DNA of 31,923 bases from Macrostomum lignano (taxonomy: Eukaryota), in assembly GCA_002269645.1 (NCBI GenBank), contig NIVC01002118.1, forward strand, positions 1 to 31,923. The letters run 5' to 3'. A program made the position numbers and the translations under genes. This document shows positions 9,101-31,859 of this stretch, piece after piece. The notes below the pieces were generated by a model. The model worked only from the letters and a program-made list of their open reading frames with translations. It had not been told where the DNA came from and searched no databases. Within the stretch, counting starts at the first letter, position 1, and each line of letters begins with the position of its first letter.

Positions 9101-12100
9101 TTATCGGGCTCTGAGGCCTCCTCGGAATCCGACTGATTGACCAAACAATTCAGACAAAGTCGGAGGCGGTTAAGTCAATTGAAAATCATAAATATAGTCA
9201 GAGGAAATTGATTCGTCAGGGAAGCCCAAAACTGGGTTTCTGGAGGGCAAAAATGCGAGTCAGGGTGCAATAACTGTGTGTCAGGAGGCGCTACAACTGT
9301 GTCAGGGGGCGCCACAACTGTGTGTCAGGAGGCGCCACAACTGTGTATCAGGAGGCGCCACAACTGTGTGTCAGGAGGTGTCACAGCTGTGTGTCAGGAG
9401 GCGCCACAACTGTGTGTCAGGAGGCGCCACAACTGTGCGTCAGGAGGTGTCACAGCTGAGTCAGGAGGCGCCACAACTGTGTGTCAGGAGGTGTCACAGC
9501 TGTGAGTCAGGAGGCGCCACAACTGTGTGTCAGGAGGCGCCACAACTGTGTGTCAGGAGGTGTCACAGCTGTGAGTCAGGAGGCGCCACAACTGTGTGTC
9601 AGGAGGCGCCACAACTGTGTGTCAGGAGGTGTCACAGCTGTGAGTCAGGAGGCGCCACAACTGTGTGTCAGGAGGCGCCACAACTGTGTGTCAGGAGGTG
9701 TCACTGCTGTGAGTCAGGAGGCGCCACAACTGTGTGTCAGGAGGCGCCACAACTGTGTGTCAGGAGGTGTCACTGCTGTGAGTCAGGAGGCGTCACAACG
9801 TGCATCAAATGAAGCACAGATTGCAGTCAGTAAATTTAAGGTTTTGCTGAGAGACACGGAACATGAAAGGATCAAGTGAATCATACTTTTGTCGCTATGG
9901 TCGCCACTAATCAAAGGTGAATTGGAGGAGGGAGTCCACTGCAGAAAGCTCACCTTCTTCTTGTCCGCTCTCTCCAGTCCGAAGTACTCGCAGACCGCTC
10001 GTTCCAGGTTTTCGACCTCTTCTTCGACCAGTTTCGGGTAGGTTCGAACCTCAACCAGTTGTTCGTCTTTGAACTTCCGGTACGTGCCCTCGATGGCCTT
10101 CAGCGTGTCCAGCGCCCGGCTGAGCTGGTGCTTCAGGCCGGCCTCCGTGGACTCCTGGCGGAGCTTGTCCATCACGACGTCCAGCTGGGCTTCCCGGTCC
10201 TGGTTCTGCCGGTTGTGCTGCTCCCGGTTGGCGTCCAGGCGCTCTACCAGGGTGCGCTCAAGGCCGGCGAGGTCGAGCTGATGCCGATCCCACAGGTGCG
10301 CGGCGCCCTGTGCCAGCTTGTACAGCGACTTCAACTGGACGCCGATTCGCTTGGCGTTGGCCTCAAATAGACGCTGCGATAAGGGGTAATTGGGGTTTTC
10401 TATGCAGGCCAAGGGATAATTTTGTGCAACCCCAATTTGGCGGGGAAAACCCAGTAGGATTTCGGAGAGCTGGGAAAATCTACTGTGGGGAGATTATCGT
10501 AGAAATGAGTAAATTACTGGGCATTTTATTTTGACATGGGAGAAATCCGGGTAGGGTTCAGGGTAGAATTTCCATCTGCAGCTCACATCCATAGCCTCCA
10601 GTCGCTCCTCGAACACGCGCTGCTGCGCGCTGATGAGCGGCAGGCAGCGCTCCTTGACCATGGCGTCCGCCTCCTGCTCAGTGGACACGCCGTCGCTCAC
10701 CAGGCCCTGCTTGAGCTGGTCCATGGCCTCCAGGCAGTGCTGGCAGACTCTCTCGTAGTCTTCGTACACCTGCTGCAGGTACTTCTGGTTGGTCTCGTCT
10801 GAAGCCGCAGTGGATGCAATGCGTTGTTTTTTAGTCTCCGGTTTCGTAAGTTTACTACAGTAAGAGCTTTCATCATCAAGGCAAGTCTTCATTGAGCCCC
10901 AGTGGCCTGCGCAACCTTGGGCCAATCGCCCCAATTCAAAATTGCGCTTCTTAAAAAAATAGATTGAAAGAGTCAGCTAAGCTGTCTTAGGACGTGGCAT
11001 CCACCGGCCTAAGAGACTGGGGTAAGGACGCGCACGCCAAGACACCAAATATTGGCTGGCGCCCTTTAGGGTTGCGACTCCCTCCAATGAAAACTCCTGG
11101 GCACGCCACTGATTGAGTCTTAGAGGTTTTTAATGGTTTACGCCAATTAGGCCTTCAAAAACTTTCCATCAGTTTATACTCTAAAGAGTCCGTAGCCATA
11201 GGCCTCGTGAGAAATTCAGGGGCAGGTGTGCACCCTGCGCTTTAGAGTGTTGCCTCACGTTACTATTAGTAGTCTAATTAGTAGAACAGCAGATTGCCAC
11301 TTACCCAGCATCTTGCAAACTTGCTGCATTTTTTGGTGCCAGGCAGCCACCCCAGACTTGCAGGCGTTGGGCGGGGCTAAGCTGCTCAACTCCTCGATGA
11401 GTTCGAGTCGGCGGGAGTTGATCTCGGACTGCTCGGCGCGCATGTTGCTTAGGATGGACTCCAGGCTGGGCGGGGACTGTACCTGGAGTGCGGGGTGGGT
11501 CACAGGATTCGAGGTGGATCGAGGCGGCACATCAAAGTATTCGAGGTGGATCGAGGCGGCACATCAAAGTATTCGAGGTGGATCGAGGCGGCACATCAAA
11601 GTATTCGAGGTGGATCGAGGCGGCACATCAAAGTATTCGAGGTGGATCGAGGCGGCACACCAAAGGATTCGAGGTGGATCGAGGCGGCACACCAAAGGAT
11701 TCGAGGTGGATCGAGGCGGCACATCAAAGTATTCGAGGTGGATCGAGGCGGCACACCAAAGGATTCGAGGTGGATCGAGGCGGCACATCAAAGTATTCGA
11801 GGTGGATCGAGGCGGCACATCAAAGTATTCGAGGTGGATCGAGGCGGCACACCAAAGCATTCGAGGTGGATCGAGGCGGCACATCAAAGTATTCGAGGTG
11901 GATCGAGGCGGCACATCAAAGGATTCGAGGTGGATCGAGGCGGCACACAAAAGGATTCGAGGTGGATCGAGGCGGCACACCAAAGGATTCGAGGTGGATC
12001 GAGACGGCACATCAAAGGATTCGAGGTGGATCGAGGCGAAATATCAAATGATTTGAGGTGGATCGAGGCGGCACATCAAAAGATTTGAGGCGTTCATGGC

Positions 12101-14632
12101 GGCATATAAAAGGATTTGGAGATGTTCGTGGCGGCATATCAAAGCATTCGAGGTGGATTGTGGTGGCACATCAAAGGCTTGAAAAAATAGAAAAAAAACA
12201 CATGCACTTGTAATCACGATTCTAAAAATTGCTAGCTCGGCATTGATCGTCATTTGATCGGCAAGATAAGGCACCAATAGGAGCTAATTGAATCTTACCT
12301 GCGGGCTCTGAACGAACTGATGAAATCCGGCCACGGCGACCTCCACGTGTCCGGCGCGCCACTCGGTAATTTTGTCCTGCCACTGGGCGCGCATCCGGCG
12401 CTCTCTGTCCAGCTCGGACATGACCAATCGAGCGTTGAGGTCCGCGAAGCTGCGCTGGTTGCCCAGCAGGGTCTGGTTCATCTGCACAGCCTCGTCGTCC
12501 ACGATCCGGTGCAGCTCGGCTGGCGCCAGGTGGCTGACGCGTTCCAGGACCTCGCTGTAGGAGTGGAACACCCGGCGGATCTCGGTGACCCGGTCGGACT
12601 CCAGGGCTGGGGGCGGGGTTTGAGGCTTGAAAATCATTCAAAACGCGCGCGAAATATTTCCCAGGAAATTGAGGTTTCAGAATGCACTTATTTCGATGAG
12701 TATGCGATGCATGAGATTTCCAAGACACAGAACATCCAGAATTAATGACTTTAATGAAATTAAGCCTTTCGAGTGCGTTTTCTTAGAAATTAAGCAGCCG
12801 ATCTAAATGTAAATAAGATGAAAGATTTCCAGGAAAGACGTGCAGCTCATTGCGAACTTATTTCCCGAAACACCACACTCTACACGGGGGAGAAGTGGGG
12901 ACTCGAATCTTCCAATAAAATTGTACATTTAACAAAATAAATCATCCAGGATATGGGAAGTTCTGAGATGTTTGGATGACATTTGTAGAAAAATCTGCAG
13001 ATGATATGAGTTCTGAAACCCGGCACCGCTCACCCAGCAGGTCTTCGTCGAGGCTGCCGATGGCGTTGCGTCTATCGGCGAAGACCTCCGCGACGCCCTG
13101 CCACAGGCCGAGCAGCTGGTGCTGGTCCAGCGCCATCAGTGACTCGTTGGTCGCCAGCGGGCTCAGCCGACGGTCCAGCTCCTCCTCGAGCTTGGCCAGC
13201 GTCTCGTGTAGGTTCTGGCAACGCTGGACAATCAGCGGCTCAAAGGAGACGCCGACCTGATAGAGCTCCTGGTGCATCTCCTCCAGTGTGAGGTTGTGTC
13301 GCTCGCGTCGCTTCTCTTTGATCCGGTCGATCACGTCGGAGCGCAGTTTTGACGGTCGGACCTGGGATGTTGGTGTTTGAAGAAGACCGATTATGAATTC
13401 TCCGACATCCCTCAGAGCAGAGCGGGTGAACCTGCCCTAATTTGAGATTGAGTACACCTGCCCTAATGTGCAGACGTGCAACCGACAGCTCAGCCGCAGC
13501 TATTACGCAGCGCATCTGAAGGATGCGTACGGCTGTTCAGTTGAAGGACCTGGAAGTCACCACACATGCACACCCTCACTTACCCCCAGCTAATGCTGGC
13601 ACCCATATTACAACTGAACTGATGCAATGCAGAGTTAAGTGTCTTGCTCAACGACACAAATTGTTCCAAGTGGGTCGAGAATCGAACCTTCGACCTTTCA
13701 GTTGTTTAAGTCAGACACTCTAAACACTCGGCTACAACCCCTCTAGACTACGACCATAGGCTACCAACTTAAGGCTATAGAATGAAACAAAAAATTTATA
13801 GTAGAGTCACACGGACATCGGACATCCGATCGGACAGAAACACCAATCTCGACTGTCTACATGCACGAGAGTACTTGCAATACTCAATGATCTGCATTAC
13901 GACTCTTCGGCGAGATTAAAATGCTTATTTAAAACTCCCATTCAACTGCTTAGCGTCTTGAGTCACGCCAAGTGCTGTTGGTCTTTATGGCCTTTCTTTA
14001 GCCGAGTGGCCCGACAAACTATCGATTTCAGTGGGTTCGGCCCGGGGCTTTTGCTTCCGTATCCATGATGGTGCTCAAGTTTTCGGTGTCCTACAGCCAG
14101 CTTGAAAGTTTCAGCTCACCTGATCGGGCAGGTCGGCCACCTCGGTGGCGTGCTGGCCGGACTCGGTCTCGGCCGACACCAGGTCCAGCCACTCCGCCGT
14201 CTGCCTGGCCACAACCGGGTTCTCCGTGCGGCCGTCGTTCTCCAAGGCGCGCGTCCAATCGGCCTGACGGCCGGCCAGCATGCCGCGGCTGGTGGCTGGG
14301 GCGGCGTTGCGGACCACCGGCAGGCTGAGGTCCCGGGAGGACTTCACCTGCTTCACGGCCGGCTTGTTCTCGCGCCACCACCGGGTGCCGGCCAGCTGAT
14401 CCGTGAGCTGCACCTGCGCCTCGAACAGCTGGCGGTAAACTTCGTCGTTACGCAGAACTTTGGAGCCATCGACGGGCGCTGGACGCTTTTGCTGCAGGCT
14501 GGTGTGGCCGCTGCGCGTGTTGCCCGACCGCTGCTGCGGCGCCGGCGGCTGCGGCAGCGACATGGCGGCGGCTGCTGGCTCGTCAAATCTGCTAGCGTTA
14601 GGCTGGGAGGGATGAGCCACCTCCACTTCCAT
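1..14632 (-). CDS. CCDC180: Coiled-coil domain-containing protein 180-like (ciliary; DUF4455 N-terminal region), multi-exon, 3' end outside window
   Basis: Manual splicing gives GT-AG exons 14632-14120, 13361-13034, 12606-12299, 11482-11305, 10798-10587, 10373-9954, (9132-9028), 7427-7344, 3501-3179, 2410-2054, 1634-1244, 1060-742, 535-260 and ~148-1. Phases match except at the last junction and inside 1060-742. Peptides resemble CCDC180 as I recall it: YRQLFEAQVQL, LRLHLHEPRARRAELDVHNVRAAEL, KLFSEGGNFCPEE, DLVFMEKVARWLTNTQVKIK. Confidence 0.88.
260..535 (-). CDS. CCDC180: CCDC180 exon 13
   Basis: Acceptor cctgcag|G, donor CAG|gtgagt; QQQIVRLPSTQP...LEMQSP. Confidence 0.72.
742..1060 (-). 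CDS. CCDC180: CCDC180 exon 12 (apparent 1-nt frameshift near 918)
   Basis: Acceptor tctcag|GTC (VKIKAEVS...). The first frame stops at 871-869; the shifted frame LHDIFDMFNDRSVYLNC runs to donor AG|gtaaat. Confidence 0.75.
1244..1634 (-). CDS. CCDC180: CCDC180 exon 11
   Basis: Acceptor acgcag|A, donor CAG|gtacgc, phase 2 to 0; LFSEGGNF motif. Confidence 0.88.
1825..2000 (-). mobile_element. 5'-truncated third copy of the SINE (tRNA head missing)
   Basis: Same 3' body and partial CORE, ending at cttgctcaag. Confidence 0.78.
2054..2410 (-). CDS. CCDC180: CCDC180 exon 10
   Basis: Acceptor cgcag|C, donor AA|gtaagc, phase 2 to 2; IRQNFLDFL...HNVRAAEL...ATKSA. Confidence 0.88.
2709..3029. repeat. 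29-bp minisatellite, ~11 copies (CCDC180 intron)
   Basis: Unit caacccatagtggaatcaggagacaccgc. Confidence 0.95.
3179..3501 (-). CDS. CCDC180: CCDC180 exon 9
   Basis: Acceptor tag|ACA (exact site uncertain), donor GC|gtgagt, phase 0 to 2; contains ILFTSRGSEFRVL. Confidence 0.75.
3615..4128. repeat. ~31-bp minisatellite, ~16 copies with length variants
   Basis: Unit ccctgaatccgcctctccgctcagcctcagt. Confidence 0.93.
5035..6957 (+). CDS. Alpha-arrestin / arrestin domain-containing protein (ARRDC-like), 2 exons (5035-5854, 5939-6957), ~612 aa, with Q/P- and G/S-rich C-terminal tail
   Basis: Arrestin_N-like motifs: VYSPGELLTGHVRLEL, LSPGEHVFPFACDLP, LPATFTGSYGNVSYLVKV. Arrestin_C-like: PRRAYDIGDNIFVNLNLINSS, IPPSGLPNSSIIGVRYWL. 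84-nt GT-AG intron 5855-5938 (A|gtaagt...ccaacag|AC) preserves frame. Confidence 0.9.
6330..6388 (+). repeat. Coding (CAGCCG)n hexamer encoding a QP repeat in the arrestin tail
   Basis: In frame with arrestin exon 2 (QQQPQPQPQP...). Confidence 0.9.
7344..7427 (-). CDS. CCDC180: CCDC180 exon 8
   Basis: 84 nt, phase 0-0, acceptor acttcag|GTG, strong donor GAG|gtgagt; VEKKKVKANLKPAELAKIKAAQEARLSE. Confidence 0.75.
7578..7870 (-). mobile_element. tRNA-derived SINE with MIR/CORE-like central domain (most complete copy)
   Basis: Minus strand shows an A-box-like TAGCCTAGTTG and a perfect B-box GGTTCGATTCC (7817-7807), then TGTCCTTGAGCAAGACACTTAAC...CAGCTGTAAAATGGG (7790-7729), which resembles the MIR CORE consensus. 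Two further copies are in this window. Confidence 0.8.
7855..8185. repeat. 15-bp minisatellite, ~22 copies, derived from the SINE 5' end
   Basis: Unit aggctacaacccctc is identical to the SINE terminus seen singly at 13729-13743. Confidence 0.95.
9028..9132 (-). CDS. CCDC180: Tentative CCDC180 exon 7 (acidic linker, possibly a cassette exon)
   Basis: 105 nt, phase 0-0, acceptor aatcag|TCG, weaker donor CAG|gttggt; SDSEEASEPDNAD...DAQQQ; no homology support. Confidence 0.5.
9271..9797. repeat. 23-bp two-variant minisatellite with ~69-bp higher-order pattern
   Basis: Units tcaggaggcgccacaactgtgtg and tcaggaggtgtcacagctgtgag in a recurring 2+1 order. Confidence 0.92.
9954..10373 (-). CDS. CCDC180: CCDC180 exon 6
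   Basis: Acceptor tcgcag|CGT, donor AAG|gtgagc, phase 0 to 0, 140 codons; RLFEANAKR...ADKKK. Confidence 0.85.
10587..10798 (-). CDS. CCDC180: CCDC180 exon 5
   Basis: Acceptor cttcag|AC, donor GAT|gtgagc, phase 1 to 0; ETNQKYLQQVYEDY...LEAMD. Confidence 0.85.
10900..11111. mobile_element. Putative MITE / non-autonomous DNA transposon (hAT-like ends)
   Basis: Imperfect 14-bp TIRs cagtggcctgcgca / tgggcacgccactg (12 of 14 match). Flanks attgagcc(c) and attgagtc resemble an 8-9 bp TSD. Confidence 0.45.
11305..11482 (-). CDS. CCDC180: CCDC180 exon 4
   Basis: Acceptor ctccag|GTA, donor G|gtaagt, phase 0 to 1; VQSPPSLESIL...VCKML. Confidence 0.85.
11505..12180. repeat. 32-bp minisatellite, ~17 good copies plus degenerate tail
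   Basis: Unit gtattcgaggtggatcgaggcggcacatcaaa; fills most of the CCDC180 intron 3. Confidence 0.95.
12299..12606 (-). CDS. CCDC180: CCDC180 exon 3
   Basis: Acceptor cccccag|CC, donor CAG|gtaaga, phase 1 to 0; LESDRVTEIRRVF...FVQSPQ. Confidence 0.85.
13034..13361 (-). CDS. CCDC180: CCDC180 exon 2
   Basis: Acceptor atcccag|GTC, donor G|gtgagc, phase 0 to 1; VRPSKLRSDVIDRIKE...DEDLL. Confidence 0.85.
13453..13743 (-). mobile_element. Second copy of the tRNA/CORE-like SINE
   Basis: Shares gtgcaaccgacagctcagccgcagctatt, ccagctaatgctggcaccc, gcaatgcagagttaagtgtcttgctcaa, gaatcgaacc and ggctacaacccctc with the 7.6-7.9 kb copy. Confidence 0.8.
14120..14632 (-). CDS. CCDC180: CCDC180 coding exon 1
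   Basis: ATG at 14632 (alternative ATG at 14563 in gccgccATG context), 171 codons, donor CAG|gtgagc, phase 0. Confidence 0.8.
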
Positions 14633-16870: not shown

Positions 16871-17293
16871 ATGGGCGACCTGTTCCGCAGTCAGGAGATG
16901 ACCCTCTGCCAACTGTTCCTGCAGGCTGAAGCTGCCTACGCCTGCGTGTCGGAGCTGGGGGAGCTCGGCCTGGTGCAGTTCCGCGACCTCAAGCCCGACA
17001 CCAACGCCTTCCAGAGGAAATTTGTCAACGAAATCCGCCGCTGCGACGAGATGGAGCGGAAGCTGCGCTACCTGGAGAAGGAGATCCGCAAAGACGGCAT
17101 CCCCATCCTTGACACCGGCGACAACCCCGAGGCTCCGAACCCGCGCGAGATGGTCGATCTGGAGGCCACCCTGGAGAAGCTGGAGAACGAGCTTCGCGAG
17201 GTGAACGCCTACGCCGAATCGTTGAAGAAGAATTTCCTGGAACTCACCGAGCTGAAGCACATCCTGCGCAAGACGCAGACCTTCTTTGAAGAG
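16871..17293 (+). CDS. ATP6V0A1: V-ATPase a coding exon 1
   Basis: ATG in caaccATGG context, 141 codons, donor GAG|gtgagc, phase 0. Confidence 0.95.
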
Positions 17294-20200
17294 GTGAGCG
17301 GGCGGTAGCGGTGTGGCTATTTGCAAAAGTACATCTGGAAACGGGTGGAATAATTCCCAGTCTGACTGGGGCATGTGCGATTCCCTCACATGAGCCCACA
17401 TTCCTGACTGGGGCATGTGCGATTCCCTCACATGAGCACACATTCCTGACTGGGGCATGTGCGATTCCCTCACATGAGCACACATTCCTGACTGGGGCAT
17501 GTGCGATTCCCTCACATGAGCACACATTCCTGACTGGGGCATGTGCGATTCCCTCACATGAGCACACATTCCTGACTGGGGCATGTGCGATTCCCTCACA
17601 TGAGCACACATTCCTGACTGGGGCATGTGCGATTCCCTCACATGAGCACACATTCCTGACTGGGGCATGTGCGATTCCCTCACATGAGCACACATTCCTG
17701 ACTGGGGCATGTGCGATTCCCTCACATGAGCACACATTCCTGACTGGGGCATGTGCGATTTCCTACCATGAGCACAGATGCCTGACCCAAGGAAATCCTT
17801 ATACATGAAAGACAAGTATAGTATCTTCTAATAGTCCTAAAAATAGTTTTTCGTGTTTTTAATTCTCTTTTCACCTACTGTAAGTAGTAAGCTTCAAAAA
17901 CAGCTACCAAAAAAGTAACCCTGGTCAAAACATCACATACTCGAAGGCGTTGCACGACCAGCACATGACCGAAGAGGCAGTCGGCCTCATGACCGAGGAG
18001 GGCATGATGGCTGGTGGTCAGGCAGCTGGCCTTCGACTGCAGTGAGTGCCTGGCTTTGTTGCTATGGCAACCTCGCATCACTCATACGTTTATAGAAAAT
18101 GCAATATATTAAATATTTAAATGTTGTCTACGTGTACCTCAATTTCCTTTTAGTTCGTCTTGAGAGAAGTAGACGATGTACTTTTGAATATTTTATTATT
18201 GTTGTTGCATTATTAGAATCCTAGTTTTTCAGTTTCAGTGTTGTCCTGCACTCTTTTGCATAAATTTATTGTCAATCCATTTTCTGTTGAGTGCTGCGGC
18301 CGCGGCTGCGGATTTCAGGTTGAGGAATCGAAGTAATTAAAAAGGGAAGATTTTGGATTGGAAATATTTTGGATTGGGAAGATTGTGGATTGGGAAGATT
18401 GTGGATTGGGAAGATTTTGGATTGGGAAGATTTTGGATTGGGAAGATTTTGGATTGGGAAGATTGTGGATTGGGAAGATTTTGGATTGGGAAGATTTTGG
18501 ATTGGGAAGCTTGTAGATTGGGAAGCTTGTCGATTGGGAAGATTGTGAATTGTGAGGTTTGTGGATTAGGAAGTTTGTGGATTGGGAAGTTTGTGGATTG
18601 GGAAGTTTGTGGATTGGGAAAATGGGGTAATTGGGAGGGTTGGGGATTTAAAAAGCTTGACACAATCGTTTTTTTTTATTTTAGAAACTTTATAAAGTAG
18701 AAAAAATCAAATTCTTAAGGCAATCAACGTAAAACCCTTGTGAGTTTAAGTTATGATAAAACAATAAATACTTCACTAGGTAGTATTGAGAGGATGTTGT
18801 AACCGTTTTCTTAAAAAAATGCTTTCAACAAGACTGAAAGCCTGCCCAGCGCAGAGGACCCAGCTGCGGGCATGGCGCAGGGCGGCTCCCAGCTGCAGCT
18901 GGTCAGCCTCCGAGGCGATGGCGACGCCACAAGAACTGCCTCAGATACTACTGCTGTGGATGGCGGCGATAGTAGTAATAATGGTGGCAGCGACATCGGC
19001 GGATTAAAGCATTTGCAGTTTGAGTGAGACCTGCAACTGACTGCTTGGGGAATCTTTGATGTGGCTTTTGCTGATACATAATGACTTTGATTTGTGATCC
19101 TCAGCTGTGCTGACTTTTATCCCTGGTACCAGTGCCTGTGTGTGCAGTGTCGGTGCCTGTGTGCAGTGTCGGTGCCTGTGTGCAGTGTCGGTGCCTGTGT
19201 GTGCAGTGTCGATGCCTGCGTGTGCAGTGTCGATGCCTGTGTGCAGTGTCGATGCCTGTGTGCAGTGTCGATGCCTGTGTGCAGTGTCGATGCCTGTGTG
19301 TGCAGTGTCGGTGCCTGTGTGCTGTGTCAGTGCCTGTGTGTAGAGTCTGTGTGCGTGTGTGTGCAGTGTCGGTGCCTGTGTGTGCAGTGTCGGTGCCTGT
19401 GTGCTGTGTCAGTGCCCGTGTGTGTGCAGTGTCGGTGCCTGTGTGTGCAGTGTCGGTGCCTGTGTGCAGTGTCGGTGCCTGTGTGCTGTGTCAGTGCCTG
19501 TGCGTGCAGTGTCAGTGCCTGTGTGTGCAGTGTCAGTGCCTGTGTGTGCAGTGTCGGTGCCTGTGTGCTGTGTCAGTGCCTGTGTGCAGTGTCAGTGCCC
19601 GTGTGTGTGCAGTGTCAGTGCCCGTGTGTGTGCATTTTTACACGATTTTACAGCAGGAATATTTTATTCGTTTGCGTTGGGCTCGCACCTTCATTACTCA
19701 TTTTAACCTCTGCAGTGCTCGGTGTGCACATCTTTATTTCACTTTGCTGGGCAAAGCTCTATTGAGACTGTTTTTACTTTTGTGCAGAAATTTAGCAATC
19801 TAAATATTCCTTTTATACCCACATCGTAAAGCTTTTTGTACAGACGGAGGGATCAAAACAGTTTAGAAGAATTTCCTTGGCAAAAATCAGCTAGCTGCTC
19901 AATAAAATTGGTAGAGTTCTCCTTCCTCCTTGGGATTGGGACATTGTGACATTGGGATTCCCCTTAGCAACCATAAGAAACTGCCCTTAGCAACCATATT
20001 GAATTTCCCTTAGCAACCATCATTTGACATTGGATTTCCGTTAGCAACCATTATCTAGCATTTGGATTTCCCTTAGCAACTAATGTCTAGCATTGGGATT
20101 TCCCTTAGCAACGATTATCTAGCATTTAGATTTCCCTTAGCAACCAATTACTACCATTAGATGAAAATCCTGTAGTAAATTCACAACGAACTCTAAAATT

Positions 20201-23200
20201 TGCCTAAACACCTTAACAACGCTGCCATAGCAACCAGCTCGAAGTTTGAGCCCCGCCGCCCCCTCCCCCACCCAGATCGGTGGCCGGCGTCATTCTTCGT
20301 GAGCGCCTGCCGGCATTCGAGCGGATGCTGTGGCGAGTTTGCCGGGGCAACGTCTTCCTCAAGCAGGCGGAGATCGACACGGCCCTGGAGGACCCGGCCA
20401 CCGGCGACAAGGTGCTCAAGTCGGTGTTTATCATCTTCTTCCAGGGCGAGCAACTGAAGACTCGGGTGAAGAAGATCTGCGAAGGATTCCGGGCCACGCT
20501 GTACCCGTGCCCGGACAGCCAGGCGGAGCGGCGCGAGATGGCCATCAGCGTGATGACGCGGATCGAGGACCTCAACACCGTGCTCAACACCACGGTGGAC
20601 CATCGGATGCGAGTGCTCATGGCCGCGGCCAAGAACCTCCGCCTGTGGTTCATCAAGGTCGGCAAGATCAAAGCCATCTACCACACACTGAACATGTTCA
20701 ATGTTGAGGCCACCAACAAGTGCCTTATCGCCGAGGCCTGGTGCGCTGTTGACGATCTGGACAAGATTCACTTGGCGCTGAGGCGTGGCACCGAGAGGGC
20801 CGGGAGTTCGATTCCTCCTATTCTCAACCGGATGTCCACCAGGTTAGGCGCTGCTTCACTGACTTGTCCAATTCACTGAATGTAAACTGCATCCTGAACT
20901 CCATCATTCACAGATTGTGAACTCCATCATTCACAGATTGTGAACTCCATCATTCACAGATTGTGAACTCCATCATTCACAGATTGTGAACTCCATCATT
21001 CACAGATTGTGAACTCCATCATTCACAGATTGTGAACTCCATCATTCACAGATTGTGAACTCCATCATTCACAGATTGTGAACTCCATCATTCACAGATT
21101 GTGAACTCCATCATTCACAGATTGTGAACTCCATCATTCACAGATTGTGAACTGCATCATTCACAAATTGTGAACTGCATCCTAAACTCCATCATTCACA
21201 AATTGTGAACTCCATCATTCACAGATTGTGAACTCCATCATTCACAGATTGTGAACTGCATCATTCACAAATTGTGAACTGCATCATTCACAGATTGTGA
21301 ACTGCATCATTCACAAATTGTGAACTGCATCCTAAACTCCATCATTCACAGATTGTGAACCGCATCCTGAGCTCGCCAAACTTACAGCTCTTGAACCCCC
21401 CCCGCAGGGAGATGCCCCCAACCTACTTCCGGGTCAACAAGCTGACCTCCGGCTTCCAGAGCATCATCGACGCGTACGGCGTGGCGTCCTACCGCGAGGC
21501 GAACCCCTCGCCCTTCGCCATCGTGACCTTCCCGTTCCTGTTCGCCGTGATGTACGGCGACTTCGGGCACGGCACGCTGATGTTCCTGGCTGCGCTGTGG
21601 ATGGTGCTGCGGGAGAAGCAGCTGGCGCCTACTGCCAAGCTGTCCGAGATCTGGGCCACGTTTTTTAATGGCCGCTACATCATACTCATGATGGGGGCCT
21701 TCTCCATCTACACCGGGCTTATTTATAATGACTGCTTCTCCAGGTGAGGCCCACCCACCGGGTTCTAGTAGTATTCTGCGCACCTGAACTGTGTCCGTTT
21801 TTTGTGTTCGGGATCTGGGATCTGGAATCTGGGATTTCAGATTTGGAGTCTGGGATTTCGGATTTGGGATCTGGGATTTCGGATTTGGGATCTGCACTGG
21901 GATTTTGGATTTCGGATCTGCACTGGGATTTTGAATTTGGGATCTGGGATTTGGACTTGGGATCTGGGGTTTTGAATTTGGGATCTGGGATTTCAGATTT
22001 GGGATCTCGGATGTCGGACTTGGGATCTGGGATGTCAGATTTGGGATCTGGGATGTCGGATTTGGGATCTAGGATTTTGGGTTTGGGCTCTAGGATTTCG
22101 GATTTGGGATCTCTAATTTCGGATTTGGAATCAAGGTCGGATTTGGGATCTGGGATGTCGGATTTGGGATTTGGGATGTCGGATTTGGGATTCGAGATCT
22201 CCGATAACAGCGTTTGACTCTAGGATTTGAGATTTGTCATACTATATCAAATATTTGGGATTTGGGATTCAAGAGGTGAAATTGGGTCGAGTTTAGTAAT
22301 TTAAAAAGCTTGTCTAAGCAAACTCGCATCAATGCTGTTTATGATCTTCGGATTTCTGAGATGGAGATCGTGCAGGGACAAATTCTCTCATTTATCCCCA
22401 TCGGCCATGCAGGTCGGTGAACATCTTCGGCTCCGGCTGGAGCGTACGCGGCCAGTTCAACCAGTCCCTGACGCCCGACCAGATTCGAACTCAGGTCCGC
22501 GGCATCGAGTCGCTCCAGCTGAACCCCAACGACGCCCAGGCGAAGGCCTGGCGGGCCAACCCCTACCCGTTCGGCCTGGACCCGGTGTGGCAGGTGTCCG
22601 GCAACAAGATCACCTTCACCAACAGCATCAAGATGAAGACCTCCGTGGTGCTGGGCGTCATCCACATGCTGTTTGGCGTGTTTGTCAGCCTCACTAACCA
22701 TCTGCACCGCCGGGACATGCTGTCAGTTGTTGGCGAGTTCGTGCCGCAGGTCCTGTTCCTGCTGGGCATGTTCGGCTACCTGGTGATCCTCATCCTGTAC
22801 AAGTGGGCCGTCTACTCTGGCCGGAACAGCAACTGCGCCCCGAACCTGCTCATTGGTGAGGCTGTTAGACATCTGCGGTTCAAGGGTGTTAGACATCTGC
22901 GGTTAAAGGGTGTTAGACATCTGCGGTTAAAGGGTGTTAGACATCTGCGGTTAAAGGGTGTTAGACATCTGCGGTTAAAGGGTGTTAGACATCTGCGGTT
23001 AAAGGGTGTTAGACATCTGCGGTTAAAGGGTGTTAGAGATTCAAACGAGGTGTTAAAAGTTTGCGCGAGGGTGTTAGATATCTAAGCGAGGGTGTTAGAT
23101 ATCAACACGAGGTTGTTAGAGATCTAAGCGAGGGTGTTAGAGATCTAAGCGAGGATGTTAGAGGTCTAAGCGAGGGTATATATAGTAAATATCGACACGA

Positions 23201-25588
23201 GGTTGTTAAAGATGTAAGCCGAGGTTGTCAGAGATCTACGACGAGGTTGTTAGAGATCTAAGCAAGACTGTTAGAGATCTAAGCGAGGGTGTTAGAGATC
23301 TCTGCAACCCGTATGAGAGTGTGTTAGATATTTTAGCTAGGGTTATAGATCAGTCAGATTGGAAGGTGCCAGACGGGATGCTGAGCGCTCACCATCGCCC
23401 GCCCGTAGGCCTCATCAACATGTTCCTGTTCCGCTACGACAAAGCCACGAACGGCTGCCCGCCAATCTACACGGGCTATCAGGGCCTGCAGACCTTCCTG
23501 GTGCTGCTCATCATCCCCTGCGCTCCCTGGATGCTGCTGGTCAAGCCGCTGATTCTGCGCCGCCGTCAGCAGATGCTGGCCAGGGGCGGCGCCATGATGG
23601 GGCAGCAGCAGCCGCAGCCGCAGATGCAGCCGGATGCTGGAGTCGATGGTGGAGATCAAACTGAGCTGGGCATGGGCAGCAGCAGGATGGCGGCAACAAT
23701 ATCCATGACGGCGATAAGGCTGTCGATATGGGAGCCGGATATGGGGATCACGGAGAGGAGGTGAGCGGTGACTGTCACACAGTGTCACTAGCATGACTGT
23801 CACACAGTGTCACTAGCATGACTGTCACACAGTGTCACTAGCATGACTGTCACACAGTGTCACTAGCATGACTGTCACACAGTGTCACCAGCCTGACTGT
23901 CAGTGTCACTAGCATGACTGTCACACAGTGTCACCAGCCTGACTGTCACACAGTGTCACCAGCATGACTGTCACACAGTGTCACCAGCATGACTGTCACA
24001 GTGTCACCAGCCTGACTGTCACACAGTGTCACCAGCATGACTGTCACACAGTGTCACCAGCATGACTATCACAGTGTCACCAGCCTGACTGTCACACAGT
24101 GTCACCAGCATGACTGTCACACAGTGTCACCAGCATGACTGTCACACAGTGTCACCAGCATGACTATCACAGTGTCACCAGCCTGACTGTCACACAGTGT
24201 CACCAGCATGACTGTTACACAGTGTCACTAGCATGACTGTCACACAGTGTCACCAGCCTGACTGTCACACAGTGTCACCAGCCTGACTGTCAGTGTCACT
24301 AGCATGACTGTCACACAGTGTCACTAGCATGACTGTCACACAGTGTCACTAGCATGACTGTCACACAGTGTCACCAGCCTGACTGTCACACAGTGTCACC
24401 AGCATGACTGTCAGTGTCACTAGCATGACTGTCAGCGTCACCAGCATGACTGTCACACAGTGTCACCAGCATGACTGTCACACAGTGTCACCAGCATGAC
24501 TATCACAGTGTCACCAGCCTGACTGTCACACAGTGTCACCAGCATGACTGTCACACAGTGTCACCAGCATGACTGTCACACAGTGTCACCAGCATGACTA
24601 TCACAGTGTCACCAGCCTGACTGTCACACAGTGTCACCAGCATGACTGTCACACAGTGTCACTAGCATGACTGTCACACAGTGTCACCAGCATGACTGTC
24701 ACACAGTGTCACCAGCATGACTGTCAGTGTCACCAGCATGACTGTCAGCGTCACCAGCATGACTGTCACACAGTGTCACCAGCATGACTGTCACACAGCG
24801 TCACCAGGCTGACTGTCACACAGTGTCACCAGCATGACTGTCAGTTTCACCAGCATGACTGTCACACAGTGTCACCAGCCTGACTGTCACACAGTGTCAC
24901 CAGCCTGACTGTCACACAGTGTCACCAGCATGACTGTCACACAGCGTCACCAGGCTGACTGTCTCACAGTGTCACCAGCATGACTGTCAGTTTCACCAGC
25001 ATGACTGTCACACAGTGTCACCAGCCTGACTGTCACACAGTGTCACCGGCATGACTGTCACACAGTGTCACCAGCATGACTGTCACACAGTGTCACCAGC
25101 ATGACTATCACAGTGTCACCAGCCTGACTGTCACACAGTGTCACCAGCATGACTGTCACACAGTGTCACCAGCCTGACTGTCACAGTCACCCCGCCCGTC
25201 ACGGCACCCGCAGGTGGACATCGGTGAGGTGTTCGTGCACCAGGCCATCCACACGATCGAGTACTGCCTGAGCTGCATCTCCAACACCGCCAGCTACCTG
25301 CGGCTGTGGGCCCTGTCGCTGGCCCACGCCCAGCTGTCCGAGGTGCTGTGGGGCATGGTGCTGGCCATCGGACTCAAGCGTGAAGGATTCGGCGGCTGCT
25401 TGGCCCTGTTCGTGGCCTTCTCATTCTGGGCTCTGCTCACCGTGGTTGTGCTGCTGCTCATGGAGGGCCTGTCGGCATTTCTGCATGCCCTGCGGCTGCA
25501 CTGGGTGGAGTTCATGAACAAGTTCTACAAGGGAGAGGGCTACAAGTTTGAGCCGTTCTCATTTGCCAGGGCAGAGCTGGAGATGTGA
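16871..25588 (+). CDS. ATP6V0A1: V-type proton ATPase V0 subunit a (116 kDa subunit; ATP6V0A1/Vha100-like), ~863 aa
   Basis: Exons 16871-17293, ~17947-18041 (or alternative 18833-19017/19023), 20276-20842, 21408-21743, 22413-22855, 23409-23760, 25214-25588, all GT-AG. Hallmarks: [63 protein letters not shown] (essential Arg), [11 protein letters not shown]. One 1-nt frameshift near 23675. The specific a1-a4 paralogue name is not meaningful in an invertebrate. Confidence 0.95.
17361..17790. repeat. 42-bp minisatellite, ~10 copies (V-ATPase intron 1)
   Basis: Unit ctgactggggcatgtgcgattccctcacatgagcacacattc. Confidence 0.95.
17947..18041 (+). CDS. ATP6V0A1: V-ATPase a exon 2A (variable linker)
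   Basis: [31 protein letters not shown](Q); donor CA|gtgagt phase 2 joins A TCG GTG of the next exon. Acceptor uncertain (aag at 17946 or cag at 17961, both phase 0). Confidence 0.75.
18058..18071. promoter_or_regulatory. RFX X-box motif (full consensus match)
   Basis: GTTGCTATGGCAAC matches the GTYNCY-AT-RGNAAC consensus; function untested. Confidence 0.45.
18344..18625. repeat. 16-bp minisatellite
   Basis: Unit ttgggaagatt(t/g)tgga. Confidence 0.92.
18833..19023 (+). CDS. ATP6V0A1: Candidate alternative V-ATPase a exon 2B
   Basis: GC-rich open frame [13 protein letters not shown]...GGLKHLQF; phase-0 acceptor tttcaacaag|ACT; phase-2 donors at 19017 (CA|gtttga) or 19023 (GA|gtgaga). Confidence 0.5.
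19133..19632. repeat. ~19-21-bp TG-rich minisatellite
   Basis: Unit tgtgtgcagtgtcggtgcc with variable TG count. Confidence 0.92.
19955..20150. repeat. Degenerate ~25-30-bp repeat with conserved core cccttagcaac (7 copies)
   Basis: Seven ttagcaac cores between 19960 and 20146. Confidence 0.8.
20221..20234. promoter_or_regulatory. Near-consensus RFX X-box
   Basis: GCTGCCATAGCAAC, one mismatch, adjacent to the seven-half-site repeat. Confidence 0.3.
20276..20842 (+). CDS. ATP6V0A1: V-ATPase a exon 3
   Basis: Acceptor cccag|A, donor AG|gttagg; [20 protein letters not shown]...ILNRMST. Confidence 0.93.
20895..21365. repeat. 23-bp minisatellite, ~19 copies
   Basis: Unit tgaactccatcattcacagattg. 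Confidence 0.95.
21408..21743 (+). CDS. ATP6V0A1: V-ATPase a exon 4
   Basis: Acceptor ccgcag|G, donor AG|gtgagg; [11 protein letters not shown]...IYNDCFS. Confidence 0.93.
21808..22270. repeat. Degenerate gggatttcggatttgggatct repeat
   Basis: Recurrent (gat)ttgggatct/ttcg motifs with ~20-bp period. Confidence 0.85.
22413..22855 (+). CDS. ATP6V0A1: V-ATPase a exon 5
   Basis: Acceptor atgcag|G, donor G|gtgagg; SVNIFGSGW...APNLLI. Confidence 0.93.
22860..23350. repeat. 24-bp minisatellite grading into a degenerate ~21-bp repeat
   Basis: ggtgttagacatctgcggttaaag x~7, then gagggtgttagagatctaagc-like units. Confidence 0.88.
23409..23760 (+). CDS. ATP6V0A1: V-ATPase a exon 6 (apparent 1-nt deletion at 23674-23676)
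   Basis: Acceptor cgtag|GC; LINMFL...PWMLLVKP; donor GAG|gtgagc is in phase only after adding one G. Confidence 0.88.
23768..25190. repeat. 25-bp minisatellite (with 21/23-bp deletion variants) filling the whole last V-ATPase intron
   Basis: Unit tgactgtcacacagtgtcac(c/t)agc(a/c). Confidence 0.96.
25214..25588 (+). CDS. ATP6V0A1: V-ATPase a terminal exon
   Basis: Acceptor ccgcag|GTG; [19 protein letters not shown]...FEPFSF; TGA at 25586-25588. Confidence 0.95.
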
Positions 25589-30800: not shown

Positions 30801-31859
30801 TGAAGATGACAGATGAGAGTGGAAATGATAGGGGATTGAAGATGACAGATGAGAGTGGAAATGATAGGGGATTGAAGATGACAGATGAGAGTGGAAATGA
30901 TAGGGGATTGAAGATGACAGATGAGAGTGGAAATGATAGGGGATTGAAGATGACAGATGAGAGTGGAAATGATAGGGGATTGAAGATGACAGATGAGAGT
31001 GGAAATGATAGGGGATTGAAGATGACAGATGAGAGTGGAAATGATAGGGGATTGAAGATGACAGATGAGAGTGGAAATGATAGGGGATTGAAGATGACAG
31101 ATGAGAGTGGAAATGATAGGGGATTGAAGATGACAGATGAGAGTGGAAATGATAGGGGATTGAAGATGACAGATGAGAGAGGAAATGATAGGGGATTGAA
31201 GATGACAGATGAGAGTGGAAATGATAGGGGATTGAAGATGACAGATGAGAGTGGAAATGATAGGGGATTGAAGATGACAGATGAGAGTGGAAATGATAGG
31301 GGATTGAAGATGACAGATGAGAGTGGAAATGATAGGGGATTGAAGATGACAGATGAGAGTGGAAATGATAGGGGATTGAAGATGACAGATGAGAGTGGAA
31401 ATGATAGGGGATTGAAGATGACAGATGAGAGTGGAAATGATAGGGGATTGAAGATGACAGATGAGAGTGGAAATGATAGGGGATTGAAGATGACAGATGA
31501 GAGTGGAAATGATAGGGATTGAAGATGACAGATGAGAGTGGAAATGATAGGGGATTGAAGATGACAGATGAGAGTGGAAATGATAGGGGATTGAAGATGA
31601 CAGATGAGAGTGGAAATGATAGGGGATTGAAGATGACAGATGAGAGTGGAAATGATAGGGGATTGAAGATGACAGATGAGAGTGGAAATGATAGGGGATT
31701 GAAGATGACAGATGAGAGTGGAAATGATAGGGATTGAAGATGACAGATGAGAGTGGAAATGATAGGGGATTGAAGATGACAGATGAGAGTGGAAATGATA
31801 GGGGATTGAAGATGACAGATGAGAGTGGAAATGATAGGATTGAAGATGACAGATGAGAG
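27825..31859. repeat. 36-bp satellite, ~112 nearly identical copies
   Basis: Unit cagatgagagtggaaatgataggggattgaagatga; variants are five GGG units, one GG unit and one T>A substitution at 31180. Confidence 0.99.

What the first reader, a model, noticed from the sequence alone, without database searches (positions are those of the whole stretch)
17947..19023. Candidate mutually exclusive exon pair (2A/2B) in the variable N-terminal linker of V-ATPase subunit a
Seen: exon 1 ends in phase 0 and exon 3 starts in phase 2 with (A)TCG GTG GCC = SVAGVI. Two separate GC-rich open segments between them each have a phase-0 acceptor and a phase-2 donor: 17947-18041 (...GQAAGLRLQ) and 18833-19017/19023 (...DIGGLKHLQ[FE]). 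Both end in L-Q just before SVAGVI. Including both via the phase-0 acceptor hits TAA at 19005-19007, and skipping both shifts the frame, so exactly one must be used. Known: this linker, just before the LGFVAGVI-type strand, is the poorly conserved part of the subunit-a cytosolic domain, and that domain controls targeting and regulation (yeast Vph1 versus Stv1). Inference: one gene could generate isoform diversity that vertebrates obtain from four paralogues. Caveat: phase-2 AG sites at 18840 and 18849 would let 2B act instead as a cassette after 2A.
Basis: partly seen in the sequence, partly recalled or inferred. Interest (0 to 1): 0.7.

Follow-up and report, generated by a model that had tools for sequence, protein, structure and literature searches.

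The report
Alternative linker exon in flatworm V-ATPase
A proton-pump gene of the flatworm Macrostomum lignano carries a second, probably real, alternative exon for a flexible linker, at the same spot where nematodes, insects, ticks and octopus swap exons, so it looks like a new example of a known trick; no RNA data could be reached to show how the exon is used.

Summary
The window is a whole 31,923-bp Macrostomum lignano scaffold carrying V-ATPase subunit a gene Mlig000414g2. E1+2A+E3 and E1+2B+E3 are open. 2A plus 2B from 18833 hits TAA at 19005-19007. Skipping both shifts the frame.

2A is the canonical linker exon (z 8-14 against mollusc, ant and schistosome linkers). 2B is probably a real exon. 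It is the highest-GC non-repeat stretch of the gene's introns. It diverges less than its flanks between gene copies (pooled p = 4e-4). A 73%-identical paralogue has a counterpart at the same relative place, with the same TTTGA|GTGAG donor, a phase-0 start and a Phi-x-Phi-E ending.

How 2B is spliced is unresolved. Four error-prone UniProt models contain it. Three join it after 2A as a 174-nt cassette from 18850; the fourth starts inside it. The RNA-guided GenBank models use 2A only. No transcript evidence was reachable.

Swapping exons at this junction is already known: C. elegans unc-32 exons 4a/4b/4c (all 3n+2), and RefSeq isoforms of ant, mosquito, tick and octopus.

Odds:
- mutually exclusive: about 0.45
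- cassette: about 0.25
- non-functional: about 0.2

This would be a new member of a known kind, of modest interest.

The parts
16871..17293 (+). Exon 1 of V-ATPase subunit a (MGDLFRS...KTQTFFEE); ends in phase 0; donor GAG|gtgagc
   Evidence: Identical to the N-terminus of GenBank PAA60733.1 / PAA51091.1.
17947..18041 (+). Exon 2A, 95 nt (3n+2). The canonical linker exon: [31 protein letters not shown](Q). Acceptor cgaag|G, donor CA|gtgagt.
   Evidence: Used in all GenBank models of the three gene copies. Clearly homologous to the linker of mollusc, ant and schistosome proteins (z 8-14).
18833..19023 (+). Exon 2B in its mutually exclusive form, 191 nt (3n+2): [63 protein letters not shown](E). 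Acceptor caacaag|A (phase 0), donor TTTGA|gtgaga (phase 2).
   Evidence: Highest-GC non-repeat intron window (0.64 against a median of 0.38). 1 difference in 191 nt against 27 in 504 nt of the upstream intron, compared with copy g7. Counterpart in the paralogue.
18850..19023 (+). Exon 2B in its cassette form, 174 nt (3n), read after 2A: ...LRL(H)AEDPAAG...HLQF(E). Acceptor gcccag|C (phase 2). A second phase-2 AG gives a start at 18841, but that AG is lost in copy g7 (18839 A>G).
   Evidence: This exact junction is in UniProt A0A1I8JMT7, A0A1I8JAW3 and A0A1I8J9A3.
19005..19007 (+). TAA reached when 2A is followed by 2B from 18833. This premature stop would make the double-inclusion mRNA non-productive.
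   Evidence: ORF 18786..19007.
19024..19029 (+). Donor GTGAGA of 2B. The alternative donor at 19018 (GTTTGA) is weak.
   Evidence: Five of the gene's six other donors are GTGAG. The paralogue has TTTGA|GTGAGT at the equivalent place. The 2B>E3 junction HLQFE|SVAGVI is used in the UniProt models.
20276..20842 (+). Exon 3. Its first base A completes the split codon, giving Q after 2A and E after 2B, then [12 protein letters not shown]...
21408..25588 (+). Remaining exons 21408-21743, 22413-22855, 23409-23760 and 25214-25588 (stop included). This copy lacks one G at 23673-23675 (GGG here, GGGG in the sister copies), which shifts the frame in exon 6.

Best explanation
2A and 2B are two alternative versions of the linker exon of a V-ATPase subunit-a gene, and only one is used per mRNA.

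2A is the default, canonical version. 2B is a minor, probably tissue-restricted version. It would splice E1 (17293) to 18833 and 19023 to E3 (20276). That replaces a 32-residue linker with a 64-residue Gly/Ser/Asp/Thr/Ala-rich one that looks disordered. The new linker still ends in the hydrophobic-x-hydrophobic-x pattern (L-Q-F-E) that leads into the SVAGVI strand of the distal lobe of the cytosolic N-terminal domain.

Exclusivity would be enforced at least by the reading frame. Both exons are 3n+2. Using both exons (with 2B from 18833) or using neither gives a premature stop, and presumably nonsense-mediated decay.

Shown: the frames, the splice-site positions, the exon-like composition, the local conservation, the counterpart in the paralogue, and the precedent in other animals. 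Inferred: that 2B is spliced at all, that it joins E1 rather than 2A, that it is tissue-specific, and that it changes targeting or regulation of the pump.
For: 1. Frame logic verified. The scan finds only the two candidate exons between E1 and E3.

2. 2B is the highest-GC non-repeat window of all the gene's introns. It is single-copy per gene copy, not a dispersed repeat.

3. Divergence between gene copies:
- Identical in g4.
- Against g7, 1 difference in 191 nt in 2B against 27 in 504 nt in the non-repeat upstream intron (p = 0.002).
- Between the two paralogue copies, 1 difference in 152 nt, synonymous in the proposed frame, against 19 in 579 nt in the flanks.
- Pooled p = 4e-4.

4. The paralogue Mlig018962 (73% identical) has a GC island at L001:13538-13689 (GC 0.77 against 0.43), at the same relative place between its exon 2' and exon 3'. 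It has:
- the same TTTGA|GTGAGT donor
- GC3 of 0.90 in the proposed frame
- the ending F-R-F-E
- two AGs at the start of the conserved block (exon starts 13538 and 13544), both phase 0, which fits E1'>2B' and not exon 2'>2B'
- an indel at 13501 between the two copies, which puts the coding start after that point.

5. Precedent at the same junction:
- unc-32 exons 4a/4b/4c are mutually exclusive, 155/107/122 nt (all 3n+2) and tissue-specific.
- RefSeq isoforms of one gene in Monomorium, Armigeres, Ornithodoros and Octopus differ by a swapped segment that runs from residue 142, right after FF[DE]E, to just before F[VL]AGV. In three of the four it is the only difference. Octopus has a second swapped block.
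- No cassette placed after the canonical exon was seen in any of them.

6. A 64-residue linker lies closer to the 19-53 residues seen in other proteins than the 90 residues of the cassette form.
Against: - No transcript or protein in the databases shows the E1>2B junction.
- The models that join 2B to an upstream exon join it to 2A from 18850, which is a CAG acceptor and stronger on its face than the AAG at 18833.
- The RNA-guided GenBank annotation gives 2A-only proteins for g2, g4 and g7, and exon-2'-only proteins for the paralogue. Any 2B isoform is therefore rare or was filtered out.
- Codon bias of 2B is weak (GC3 0.60 against 0.87). Its second half is AT-rich at third positions.
- 2B and 2B' are only weakly alike as proteins (z 1.5-2.4). 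Neither resembles the alternative exons of other phyla.
- The one 2B difference in g7 (18839) changes an amino acid in the proposed frame, but would be intronic for the 18841 or 18850 start.
- The gene copies are about 97-98% identical and some introns do not differ at all, so the conservation test has little power. AT-rich flanks may also carry more assembly errors.
- Phase-2 acceptors also exist inside the paralogue exon (13573, 13612).
Confidence: 0.45

Rival explanations
1. 2B is an optional cassette exon inserted after 2A, using acceptor 18849|18850 (174 nt) or 18840|18841 (183 nt). The result is a 90-residue linker, ...GLRL-H-AEDPAAG...HLQFE-SVAGVI. Here 2B's own L-Q-F-E replaces 2A's L-R-L-Q as the lead-in to the strand.
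For: - The frame is open in this form.
- This exact junction is in three UniProt models built on the ML2 assembly (A0A1I8JMT7, A0A1I8JAW3, A0A1I8J9A3).
- 18850 has a CAG acceptor with C-rich sequence upstream, like the gene's other acceptors.
- The only 2B difference in copy g7 (18839) would then lie in the intron.
Against: - These models are full of frame errors and gene fusions. From memory they come from an evidence-guided gene predictor, which I could not check because the paper is not held. A predictor that makes one isoform and must keep the homology-supported 2A can only add 2B through a phase-2 acceptor, so the models do not show real use.
- The RNA-guided GenBank models lack 2B.
- In the paralogue, the acceptors at the start of the conserved block are phase 0. 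The phase-2 AGs lie 35 nt or more inside it, and the first is a GAG.
- None of the RefSeq isoforms examined has a cassette after the canonical linker exon. Their optional micro-exons lie before it.
Confidence: 0.25
2. 2B is not a functional coding exon. It is a GC-rich intronic relic or pseudo-exon that happens to be open in one frame, and that gene predictors pick up. It looks conserved only because the gene copies are very recent duplicates.
For: - Codon bias is weak.
- It has no homologue outside M. lignano: one hit in 1.84 billion representatives, itself an M. lignano model, and no Pfam match.
- It is absent from the RNA-guided annotation.
- An open frame of 63 codons at this GC content is not rare.
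- Several introns are identical between copies.
Against: - A matching island with the same donor, phase and ending sits at the same relative place in a paralogue only 73% identical at the protein level, where the rest of the introns no longer aligns.
- In both genes it is the single highest-GC non-repeat intron window.
- Divergence drops locally inside the block in both copy pairs.
- The one change in 2B' is synonymous.
Confidence: 0.22
3. 2B acts as a 'poison' exon. Inclusion after 2A through the first AG (18833) brings in the TAA at 19005-19007 and sends the mRNA to nonsense-mediated decay, lowering subunit-a output.
For: The 2A+2B(18833) product carries a premature stop upstream of five further exon junctions. 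18833 is the first AG after the pyrimidine stretch.
Against: A poison exon does not need 63 open codons, a phase-matched donor or a strand-compatible ending. All of these are present, and the donor, phase and ending are also found in the paralogue. No case of this kind is known to me for this gene family.
Confidence: 0.05

Closest known systems
C. elegans unc-32 (V-ATPase subunit a), mutually exclusive exons 4a/4b/4c (Pujol et al. 2001, cited in PMC3585155; Kuroyanagi et al. 2013, PMC3585155 and PMC3627589)
   Same: The same gene family, with a cluster of alternative exons between two constant exons. Every alternative exon is 3n+2 (155/107/122 nt, against 95/191 nt here), so the frame allows exactly one. 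The alternative exons are unlike each other in sequence. In the worm the choice is tissue-specific (intestine, neurons, pharynx).
   Different: unc-32 has three exons and experimental proof (RT-PCR, reporters, the regulators UNC-75 and ASD-1/FOX-1, and the exon-4b mutant e189). Here there are two exons and no RNA evidence. I could not check with these tools that unc-32 exon 4 encodes exactly this linker. That rests on the shared 3n+2 class, the pattern in other animals, and my memory of the protein. The UG-rich and GCAUG repeats in the window's introns are not conserved in the paralogue.
RefSeq isoforms of the a1/Vha100-1-type gene in Monomorium pharaonis, Armigeres subalbatus, Ornithodoros turicata and Octopus sinensis
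   Same: Isoforms of one gene differ by a swapped segment that starts at residue 142, right after FF[DE]E, and ends just before F[VL]AGV. That is the same junctions as 2A/2B. One version is the canonical type, to which 2A clearly belongs.
   Different: Their second version is a recognisable shared type (QEH...GPVQLG) of 30-35 residues. 2B is 64 residues, low in complexity, and shows no similarity to it. Those isoforms are pipeline predictions. From general knowledge of that pipeline they are RNA-seq supported, but I did not check this.
Vertebrate ATP6V0A1 splice variants a1-I to a1-IV (Poea-Guyon et al. 2006, cited in PMC3812966)
   Same: Alternative splicing at the same FFDE junction. Antechinus isoforms differ by the 7-residue AELHHQQ insert. 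The variant a1-I is sorted to nerve terminals, so splicing of this gene can affect targeting.
   Different: The vertebrate event is a 3n micro-exon placed before the canonical linker exon. It is not a swap, and not an insert after it.
Yeast Vph1 / Stv1 and the mammalian a1-a4 paralogues
   Same: The N-terminal cytosolic domain of subunit a sets the location and regulation of the pump (PMC8294626).
   Different: There the diversity comes from separate genes, not from splicing. M. lignano itself has at least two paralogue families, each in several copies.

Membership tests
V-ATPase subunit a (V_ATPase_I, PF01496) | Full-length similarity to subunit a, with the Pfam domain | tested here: met
   E = 0 against hundreds of animal subunit-a proteins, all with PF01496. 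99-100% identity to M. lignano GenBank and UniProt entries.
Mutually exclusive exon cluster (unc-32 exon 4 type) | Two or more alternative exons lying side by side between the same two constant exons | tested here: met
   2A (17947-18041) and 2B (18833-19023) lie between E1 and E3. The scan finds no third candidate.
Mutually exclusive exon cluster (unc-32 exon 4 type) | Same entry and exit phase, and a length that is not a multiple of 3, so that using both or neither breaks the frame | tested here: met
   95 and 191 nt, both 3n+2. Using both gives TAA at 19005-19007. Using neither gives a frameshift. The unc-32 exons are 3n+2 as well. A phase-2 acceptor at 18850 offers an in-frame way round this.
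Mutually exclusive exon cluster (unc-32 exon 4 type) | The alternative exons encode the same part of the protein | tested here: inconclusive
   Both fill the linker and end in hydrophobic-x-hydrophobic-x before SVAGVI. 2A and 2B show no sequence similarity (z about -0.2). The known alternative versions in ant, tick and octopus are just as unlike each other.
Mutually exclusive exon cluster (unc-32 exon 4 type) | Mature mRNAs contain exactly one of the exons | not testable with these tools
   No M. lignano transcript data could be reached. Database proteins show 2A alone or 2A followed by 2B, never 2B alone after E1.
Mutually exclusive exon cluster (unc-32 exon 4 type) | Same position as the known clusters in subunit-a genes of other animals | tested here: met
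   The swapped segment of the ant, mosquito, tick and octopus isoforms begins after FF[DE]E and ends before F[VL]AGV.
Cassette exon | Length a multiple of 3, and in frame with both neighbouring exons | tested here: met
   18850-19023 is 174 nt and 18841-19023 is 183 nt. Both are open after 2A.
Cassette exon | Transcripts both with and without the exon | not testable with these tools
   Only gene models are available: with the exon in UniProt/ML2, and without it in GenBank/Mlig_3_7.
Mutually exclusive splicing through competing RNA pairing (docking site and selectors) | Intron sequences that pair so as to bring one exon forward or loop one out | tested here: not met
   In the window the longest perfect inverted repeat is 12 nt, matched or beaten in 13 of 200 shuffles. 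The paralogue does have a significant stem. See the items noticed in passing.

The most novel reading that the evidence does not exclude
2B is a two-way exon kept in both subunit-a paralogues since before they split. Its first AG (phase 0, 18833) is in frame only when it is joined to E1. A downstream CAG (phase 2, 18850) is in frame only when it is joined to 2A. One exon would then give three productive linkers (A, B and A+B), with the reading frame plus NMD pairing each acceptor with its proper upstream exon. In the paralogue, a 28-bp intron-bridging stem would set the default by looping the extra exon out.
Probability: 0.12. Interest if true: 0.5.

Novelty: new member of a known kind. Interest (0 to 1): 0.3.

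Why it matters
If 2B is used, M. lignano would be a flatworm example of linker-exon choice in subunit a. M. lignano is a transgenic, regenerating model animal. This linker lies in the part of the pump that, in yeast and mammals, helps decide where the pump goes and how it is regulated. The same junction is alternatively spliced in nematodes, arthropods, molluscs and vertebrates, so a flatworm case would add to the argument that this splicing hot spot is old in bilaterians.

In practice, the GenBank models miss the exon and the UniProt models may join it wrongly. Both are worth correcting before isoform-specific knock-downs or reporters are designed. The principle is already established in C. 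elegans, so it would not change how the field thinks.

Tried and rejected
1. The word-index search with the 2B peptide alone found nothing. This says nothing either way. P0086 contains the peptide and was still missed. Hit lengths suggest the search only admits candidates of a length near the query's.

2. HMMER with 2B against 1.84 billion representatives gave one hit, P0246, which is UniProt A0A1I8FGZ5, another error-ridden M. lignano model starting inside 2B. Its contig is not on record.

3. No protein derived from M. lignano transcripts appeared. I therefore did not run an exact look-up of predicted isoforms. Any such protein would have topped or been listed among the cluster members.

4. 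Intron tandem repeats as splicing-factor sites (GCAUG x10 before 2A, UGUGUG x35 after 2B): rejected. They are absent from the paralogue, and GCAUG also occurs 41 times in constitutive intron 6.

5. RNA pairing in the window: nothing above chance. Whole-segment duplex folding gave no useful signal, and a first attempt timed out.

6. An alternative first exon starting at ATG 18872: rejected, because the paralogue's block has no in-frame Met.

7. A transposon or dispersed repeat: 2B occurs once per gene copy and has no Pfam match.

8. Descent of 2B from the 'type B' exon of arthropods and nemerteans: no similarity.

9. 2B as the counterpart of the paralogue's annotated exon 2': rejected. That exon lines up with 2A by position and (weakly) by sequence, and the paralogue has its own separate 2B'.

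10. The paper describing the ML2 annotation is not held, so I could not check how the cassette models were made.
Full report
WHAT THE WINDOW IS

The window is an entire 31,923-bp scaffold of the Macrostomum lignano Mlig_3_7 assembly (GCA_002269645.1). GenBank protein PAA60733.1 (BOX15_Mlig000414g2, 757 aa) sits on a contig of exactly that length and matches the window's exons.

The gene is V-ATPase subunit a (PF01496), on the + strand. From splice sites and homology, the exons are 16871-17293, 17947-18041 (2A), 20276-20842, 21408-21743, 22413-22855, 23409-23760 and 25214-25588.

Sister copies g4 (locus L002) and g7 (locus L003) are about 97-98% identical, introns included. A second paralogue family, Mlig018962, is 73% identical at the protein level (loci L001 and L005).

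CHECKING THE OBSERVATION

Every coordinate and frame statement holds.
- E1 ends in phase 0.
- 2A is 95 nt. 2B is 191 nt from 18833 to 19023, or 185 nt to 19017. All are 3n+2.
- E3's first base completes the split codon.
- E1+2A+E3 and E1+2B+E3 are both open.
- 2A followed by 2B from 18833 stops at TAA 19005-19007.
- Leaving both out shifts the frame.
- The phase-2 AGs that give exon starts at 18841 and 18850 exist, and both give open cassettes after 2A.

One correction concerns the donor. Position 19023 (TTTGA|GTGAGA) matches the GTGAG shared by five of the gene's six other donors and recurs in the paralogue. Position 19017 (GTTTGA) is poor. So 2B most likely ends ...HLQFE, not ...HLQ.

A mechanical scan of the region between E1 and E3 looked for AG...GT[AG]AG segments that are 3n+2 long and open in phase 0. 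It returned only two donors, 18041 and 19023. The same scan on the paralogue also returned only two.

IS 2A THE NORMAL EXON?

Yes. [31 protein letters not shown] aligns with the linker of a chiton (ALHDPSLIDENVGLLGEEGLLAGGQAMRLG), an ant and a schistosome relative, at z = 8-14 over shuffles. All GenBank models of g2, g4 and g7 use it alone.

IS 2B A REAL EXON?

Evidence for:
- Composition. It is the highest-GC non-repeat 150-nt window in all the gene's introns (0.64 against a median of 0.38). It occurs once per gene copy.
- Divergence between copies. It is identical in g4. Against g7 it has 1 difference in 191 nt, while the non-repeat intron just upstream has 27 in 504 nt (p = 0.002).
- A counterpart in the paralogue. 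Its introns no longer align with the window's. Yet between its exon 2' (L001:11371-11525) and exon 3' (starting at 15044) lies one GC island, 13538-13689 (0.77 against a median of 0.43).
- Features of that island. It ends in the same TTTGA|GTGAGT donor. It is open with GC3 of 0.90 in the matching frame (the gene's exons have 0.87). Its ending F-R-F-E parallels L-Q-F-E.
- Divergence in the paralogue. Between its two copies the block has one change, synonymous in that frame (CGC>CGT), against 19 in 579 nt of flank. An indel at 13501 places the start of any coding block after that point. Pooled over both genes, p = 4e-4.

Evidence against:
- 2B's own codon bias is weak (GC3 0.60).
- 2B and 2B' are barely alike as proteins (z 1.5-2.4).
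- Neither has relatives outside M. lignano.
- The gene copies are so similar that some introns show no differences at all.
- The RNA-guided GenBank annotation (StringTie/TACO plus a de novo assembly) does not include it.

I put the chance that 2B is truly spliced into mRNA at roughly 0.7-0.75.

SWAP OR INSERT?

Favouring a swap (mutually exclusive use):
- In the paralogue, the two AGs at the start of the conserved block (exon starts 13538 and 13544) are both phase 0. That fits E1'>2B', not exon 2'>2B'. The first phase-2 AG lies 35 nt inside the block and is a GAG.
- In the window, 18833 follows the first AG after the pyrimidine stretch.
- The same junction is a known site of exon swapping. C. 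elegans unc-32 exons 4a/4b/4c are mutually exclusive, all 3n+2, and chosen by tissue.
- RefSeq isoforms of single genes in an ant (three versions plus a micro-exon), a mosquito, a tick and an octopus differ by a swapped segment. It runs from residue 142, right after FF[DE]E, to just before F[VL]AGV.
- In those species the only optional inserts lie before the canonical exon, never after it.
- A 64-residue linker is nearer the observed range of 19-53 residues than a 90-residue one.

Favouring an insert (cassette):
- Four UniProt models from the older ML2 assembly contain 2B. Three join it to 2A from 18850 (A0A1I8JMT7, A0A1I8JAW3, A0A1I8J9A3). The fourth (A0A1I8FGZ5) starts inside 2B.
- 18850 is a CAG acceptor with C-rich sequence upstream, like the gene's other acceptors.
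- The single g7 difference (18839 A>G) changes an amino acid in the swap frame, but would be intronic for the 18850 start. It also removes the AG that serves the 18841 start.

These models carry many frame errors and gene fusions. A single-isoform predictor that keeps 2A can only add 2B through a phase-2 acceptor. I therefore give them limited weight. I could not read how they were made.

No transcript-level evidence could be reached.

HOW IT WOULD WORK

Shown: the frame rules mean only A, B, or A plus a shortened B give full-length protein. Any other combination gives an early stop, with five exon junctions still downstream.

Inferred:
- 2A is the default.
- 2B is a rare or tissue-limited choice. 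It swaps a short conserved linker for a long, acidic, Gly/Ser/Thr-rich and probably disordered one at the entry to the distal lobe of the cytosolic domain.
- By analogy with unc-32 4b and mammalian a1-I (PMC3585155, PMC3812966), this could tune where the pump goes or what it binds.

I found no convincing regulatory signal in the window. The intron tandem repeats carry GCAUG and UG-rich motifs, but these are not conserved in the paralogue and also occur in a constitutive intron. No RNA pairing exceeds chance.

COMPARISON AND NOVELTY

This is the same kind of arrangement as unc-32 exon 4 and the arthropod and mollusc isoforms. Exon layout, phase and length class, and position were tested and met. 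Transcript exclusivity could not be tested.

2B differs in being longer, low in complexity, and unrelated in sequence to the other phyla's second version. It may be a Macrostomum-lineage exon, or simply too diverged to recognise.

M. lignano also has at least two paralogue families.

VERDICT

- Observation: confirmed.
- Novelty: a new member of a known kind.
- Interest: about 0.3.

A count of junction reads in existing RNA-seq data would settle the question.

Noticed in passing
window 23673-23675 (exon 6): This gene copy has GGG where sister copies g4 and g7 have GGGG. The missing G shifts the frame. GenBank PAA60733.1 is therefore cut to 757 aa and lacks the last membrane helices. This is either a homopolymer error in the long-read assembly or a copy that is decaying.
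   Followed up: yes
L001:13538-13689 (NIVC01000874.1, paralogue Mlig018962g4); also L005:5781-5932: An unannotated candidate alternative exon 2B' in the paralogue's intron 2. It is a GC island (0.77) with GC3 of 0.90, phase-0 AGs and the donor TTTGA|GTGAGT, and it ends ...GRGFRFE. Neither GenBank model of the paralogue contains it.
   Followed up: yes
L001:11551-11578 and L001:14921-14952: A 28-bp stem with two bulges and a perfect 17-nt core (duplex energy about -48 kcal/mol). It links a site 25 nt after the exon 2' donor to a site 91 nt before exon 3', and would loop out 2B'. No shuffle out of 200 reached 17 nt (the maximum was 14). Both arms are intact in the second copy, L005. It could be a splicing bridge or the inverted ends of an old transposon. 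No counterpart exists in the window.
   Followed up: partly
window 17362-17786, 18344-18620, 19132-19630, 19961-20158, 20895-21368, 21810-22192, 22859-23301, 23769-25187: Every intron of the gene holds its own, unrelated tandem-repeat array, with units of 7-46 nt and up to 58 copies. The paralogue's introns hold different arrays again. Copy number varies between sister copies.
   Followed up: partly
window 27825-31859: A 4-kb array of a 36-nt unit (CAGATGAGAGTGGAAATGATAGGGGATTGAAGATGA), 112 copies, 99% identical, with a very strong G-over-C skew (0.87). It runs nearly to the end of the scaffold.
   Followed up: no
window 5035-6957 (+) and 9783-10412 (-): Two other genes lie in the window. One is an arrestin-domain protein (Arrestin_N 7e-24, Arrestin_C 5e-11). 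The other, on the minus strand, is a DUF4455 protein (1e-32). The fused UniProt models of 1,504-1,510 aa seem to join two subunit-a copies through sequence that reappears among the window's ORFs at about 14.1-14.6 kb.
   Followed up: partly
P0179 vs P0152 (Octopus sinensis isoforms), residues 668-723: The octopus isoforms carry a second swapped block in the C-terminal half. This recalls unc-32 exons 7a/7b. I did not look for a counterpart in the M. lignano gene.
   Followed up: no
L004 (Logan SRR30276804 contig 22530): A full-length transcript (861 aa, P0126) from an unidentified sample, closest to the Mlig018962 paralogue among the hits. It carries an exon-2'-type linker only.
   Followed up: no
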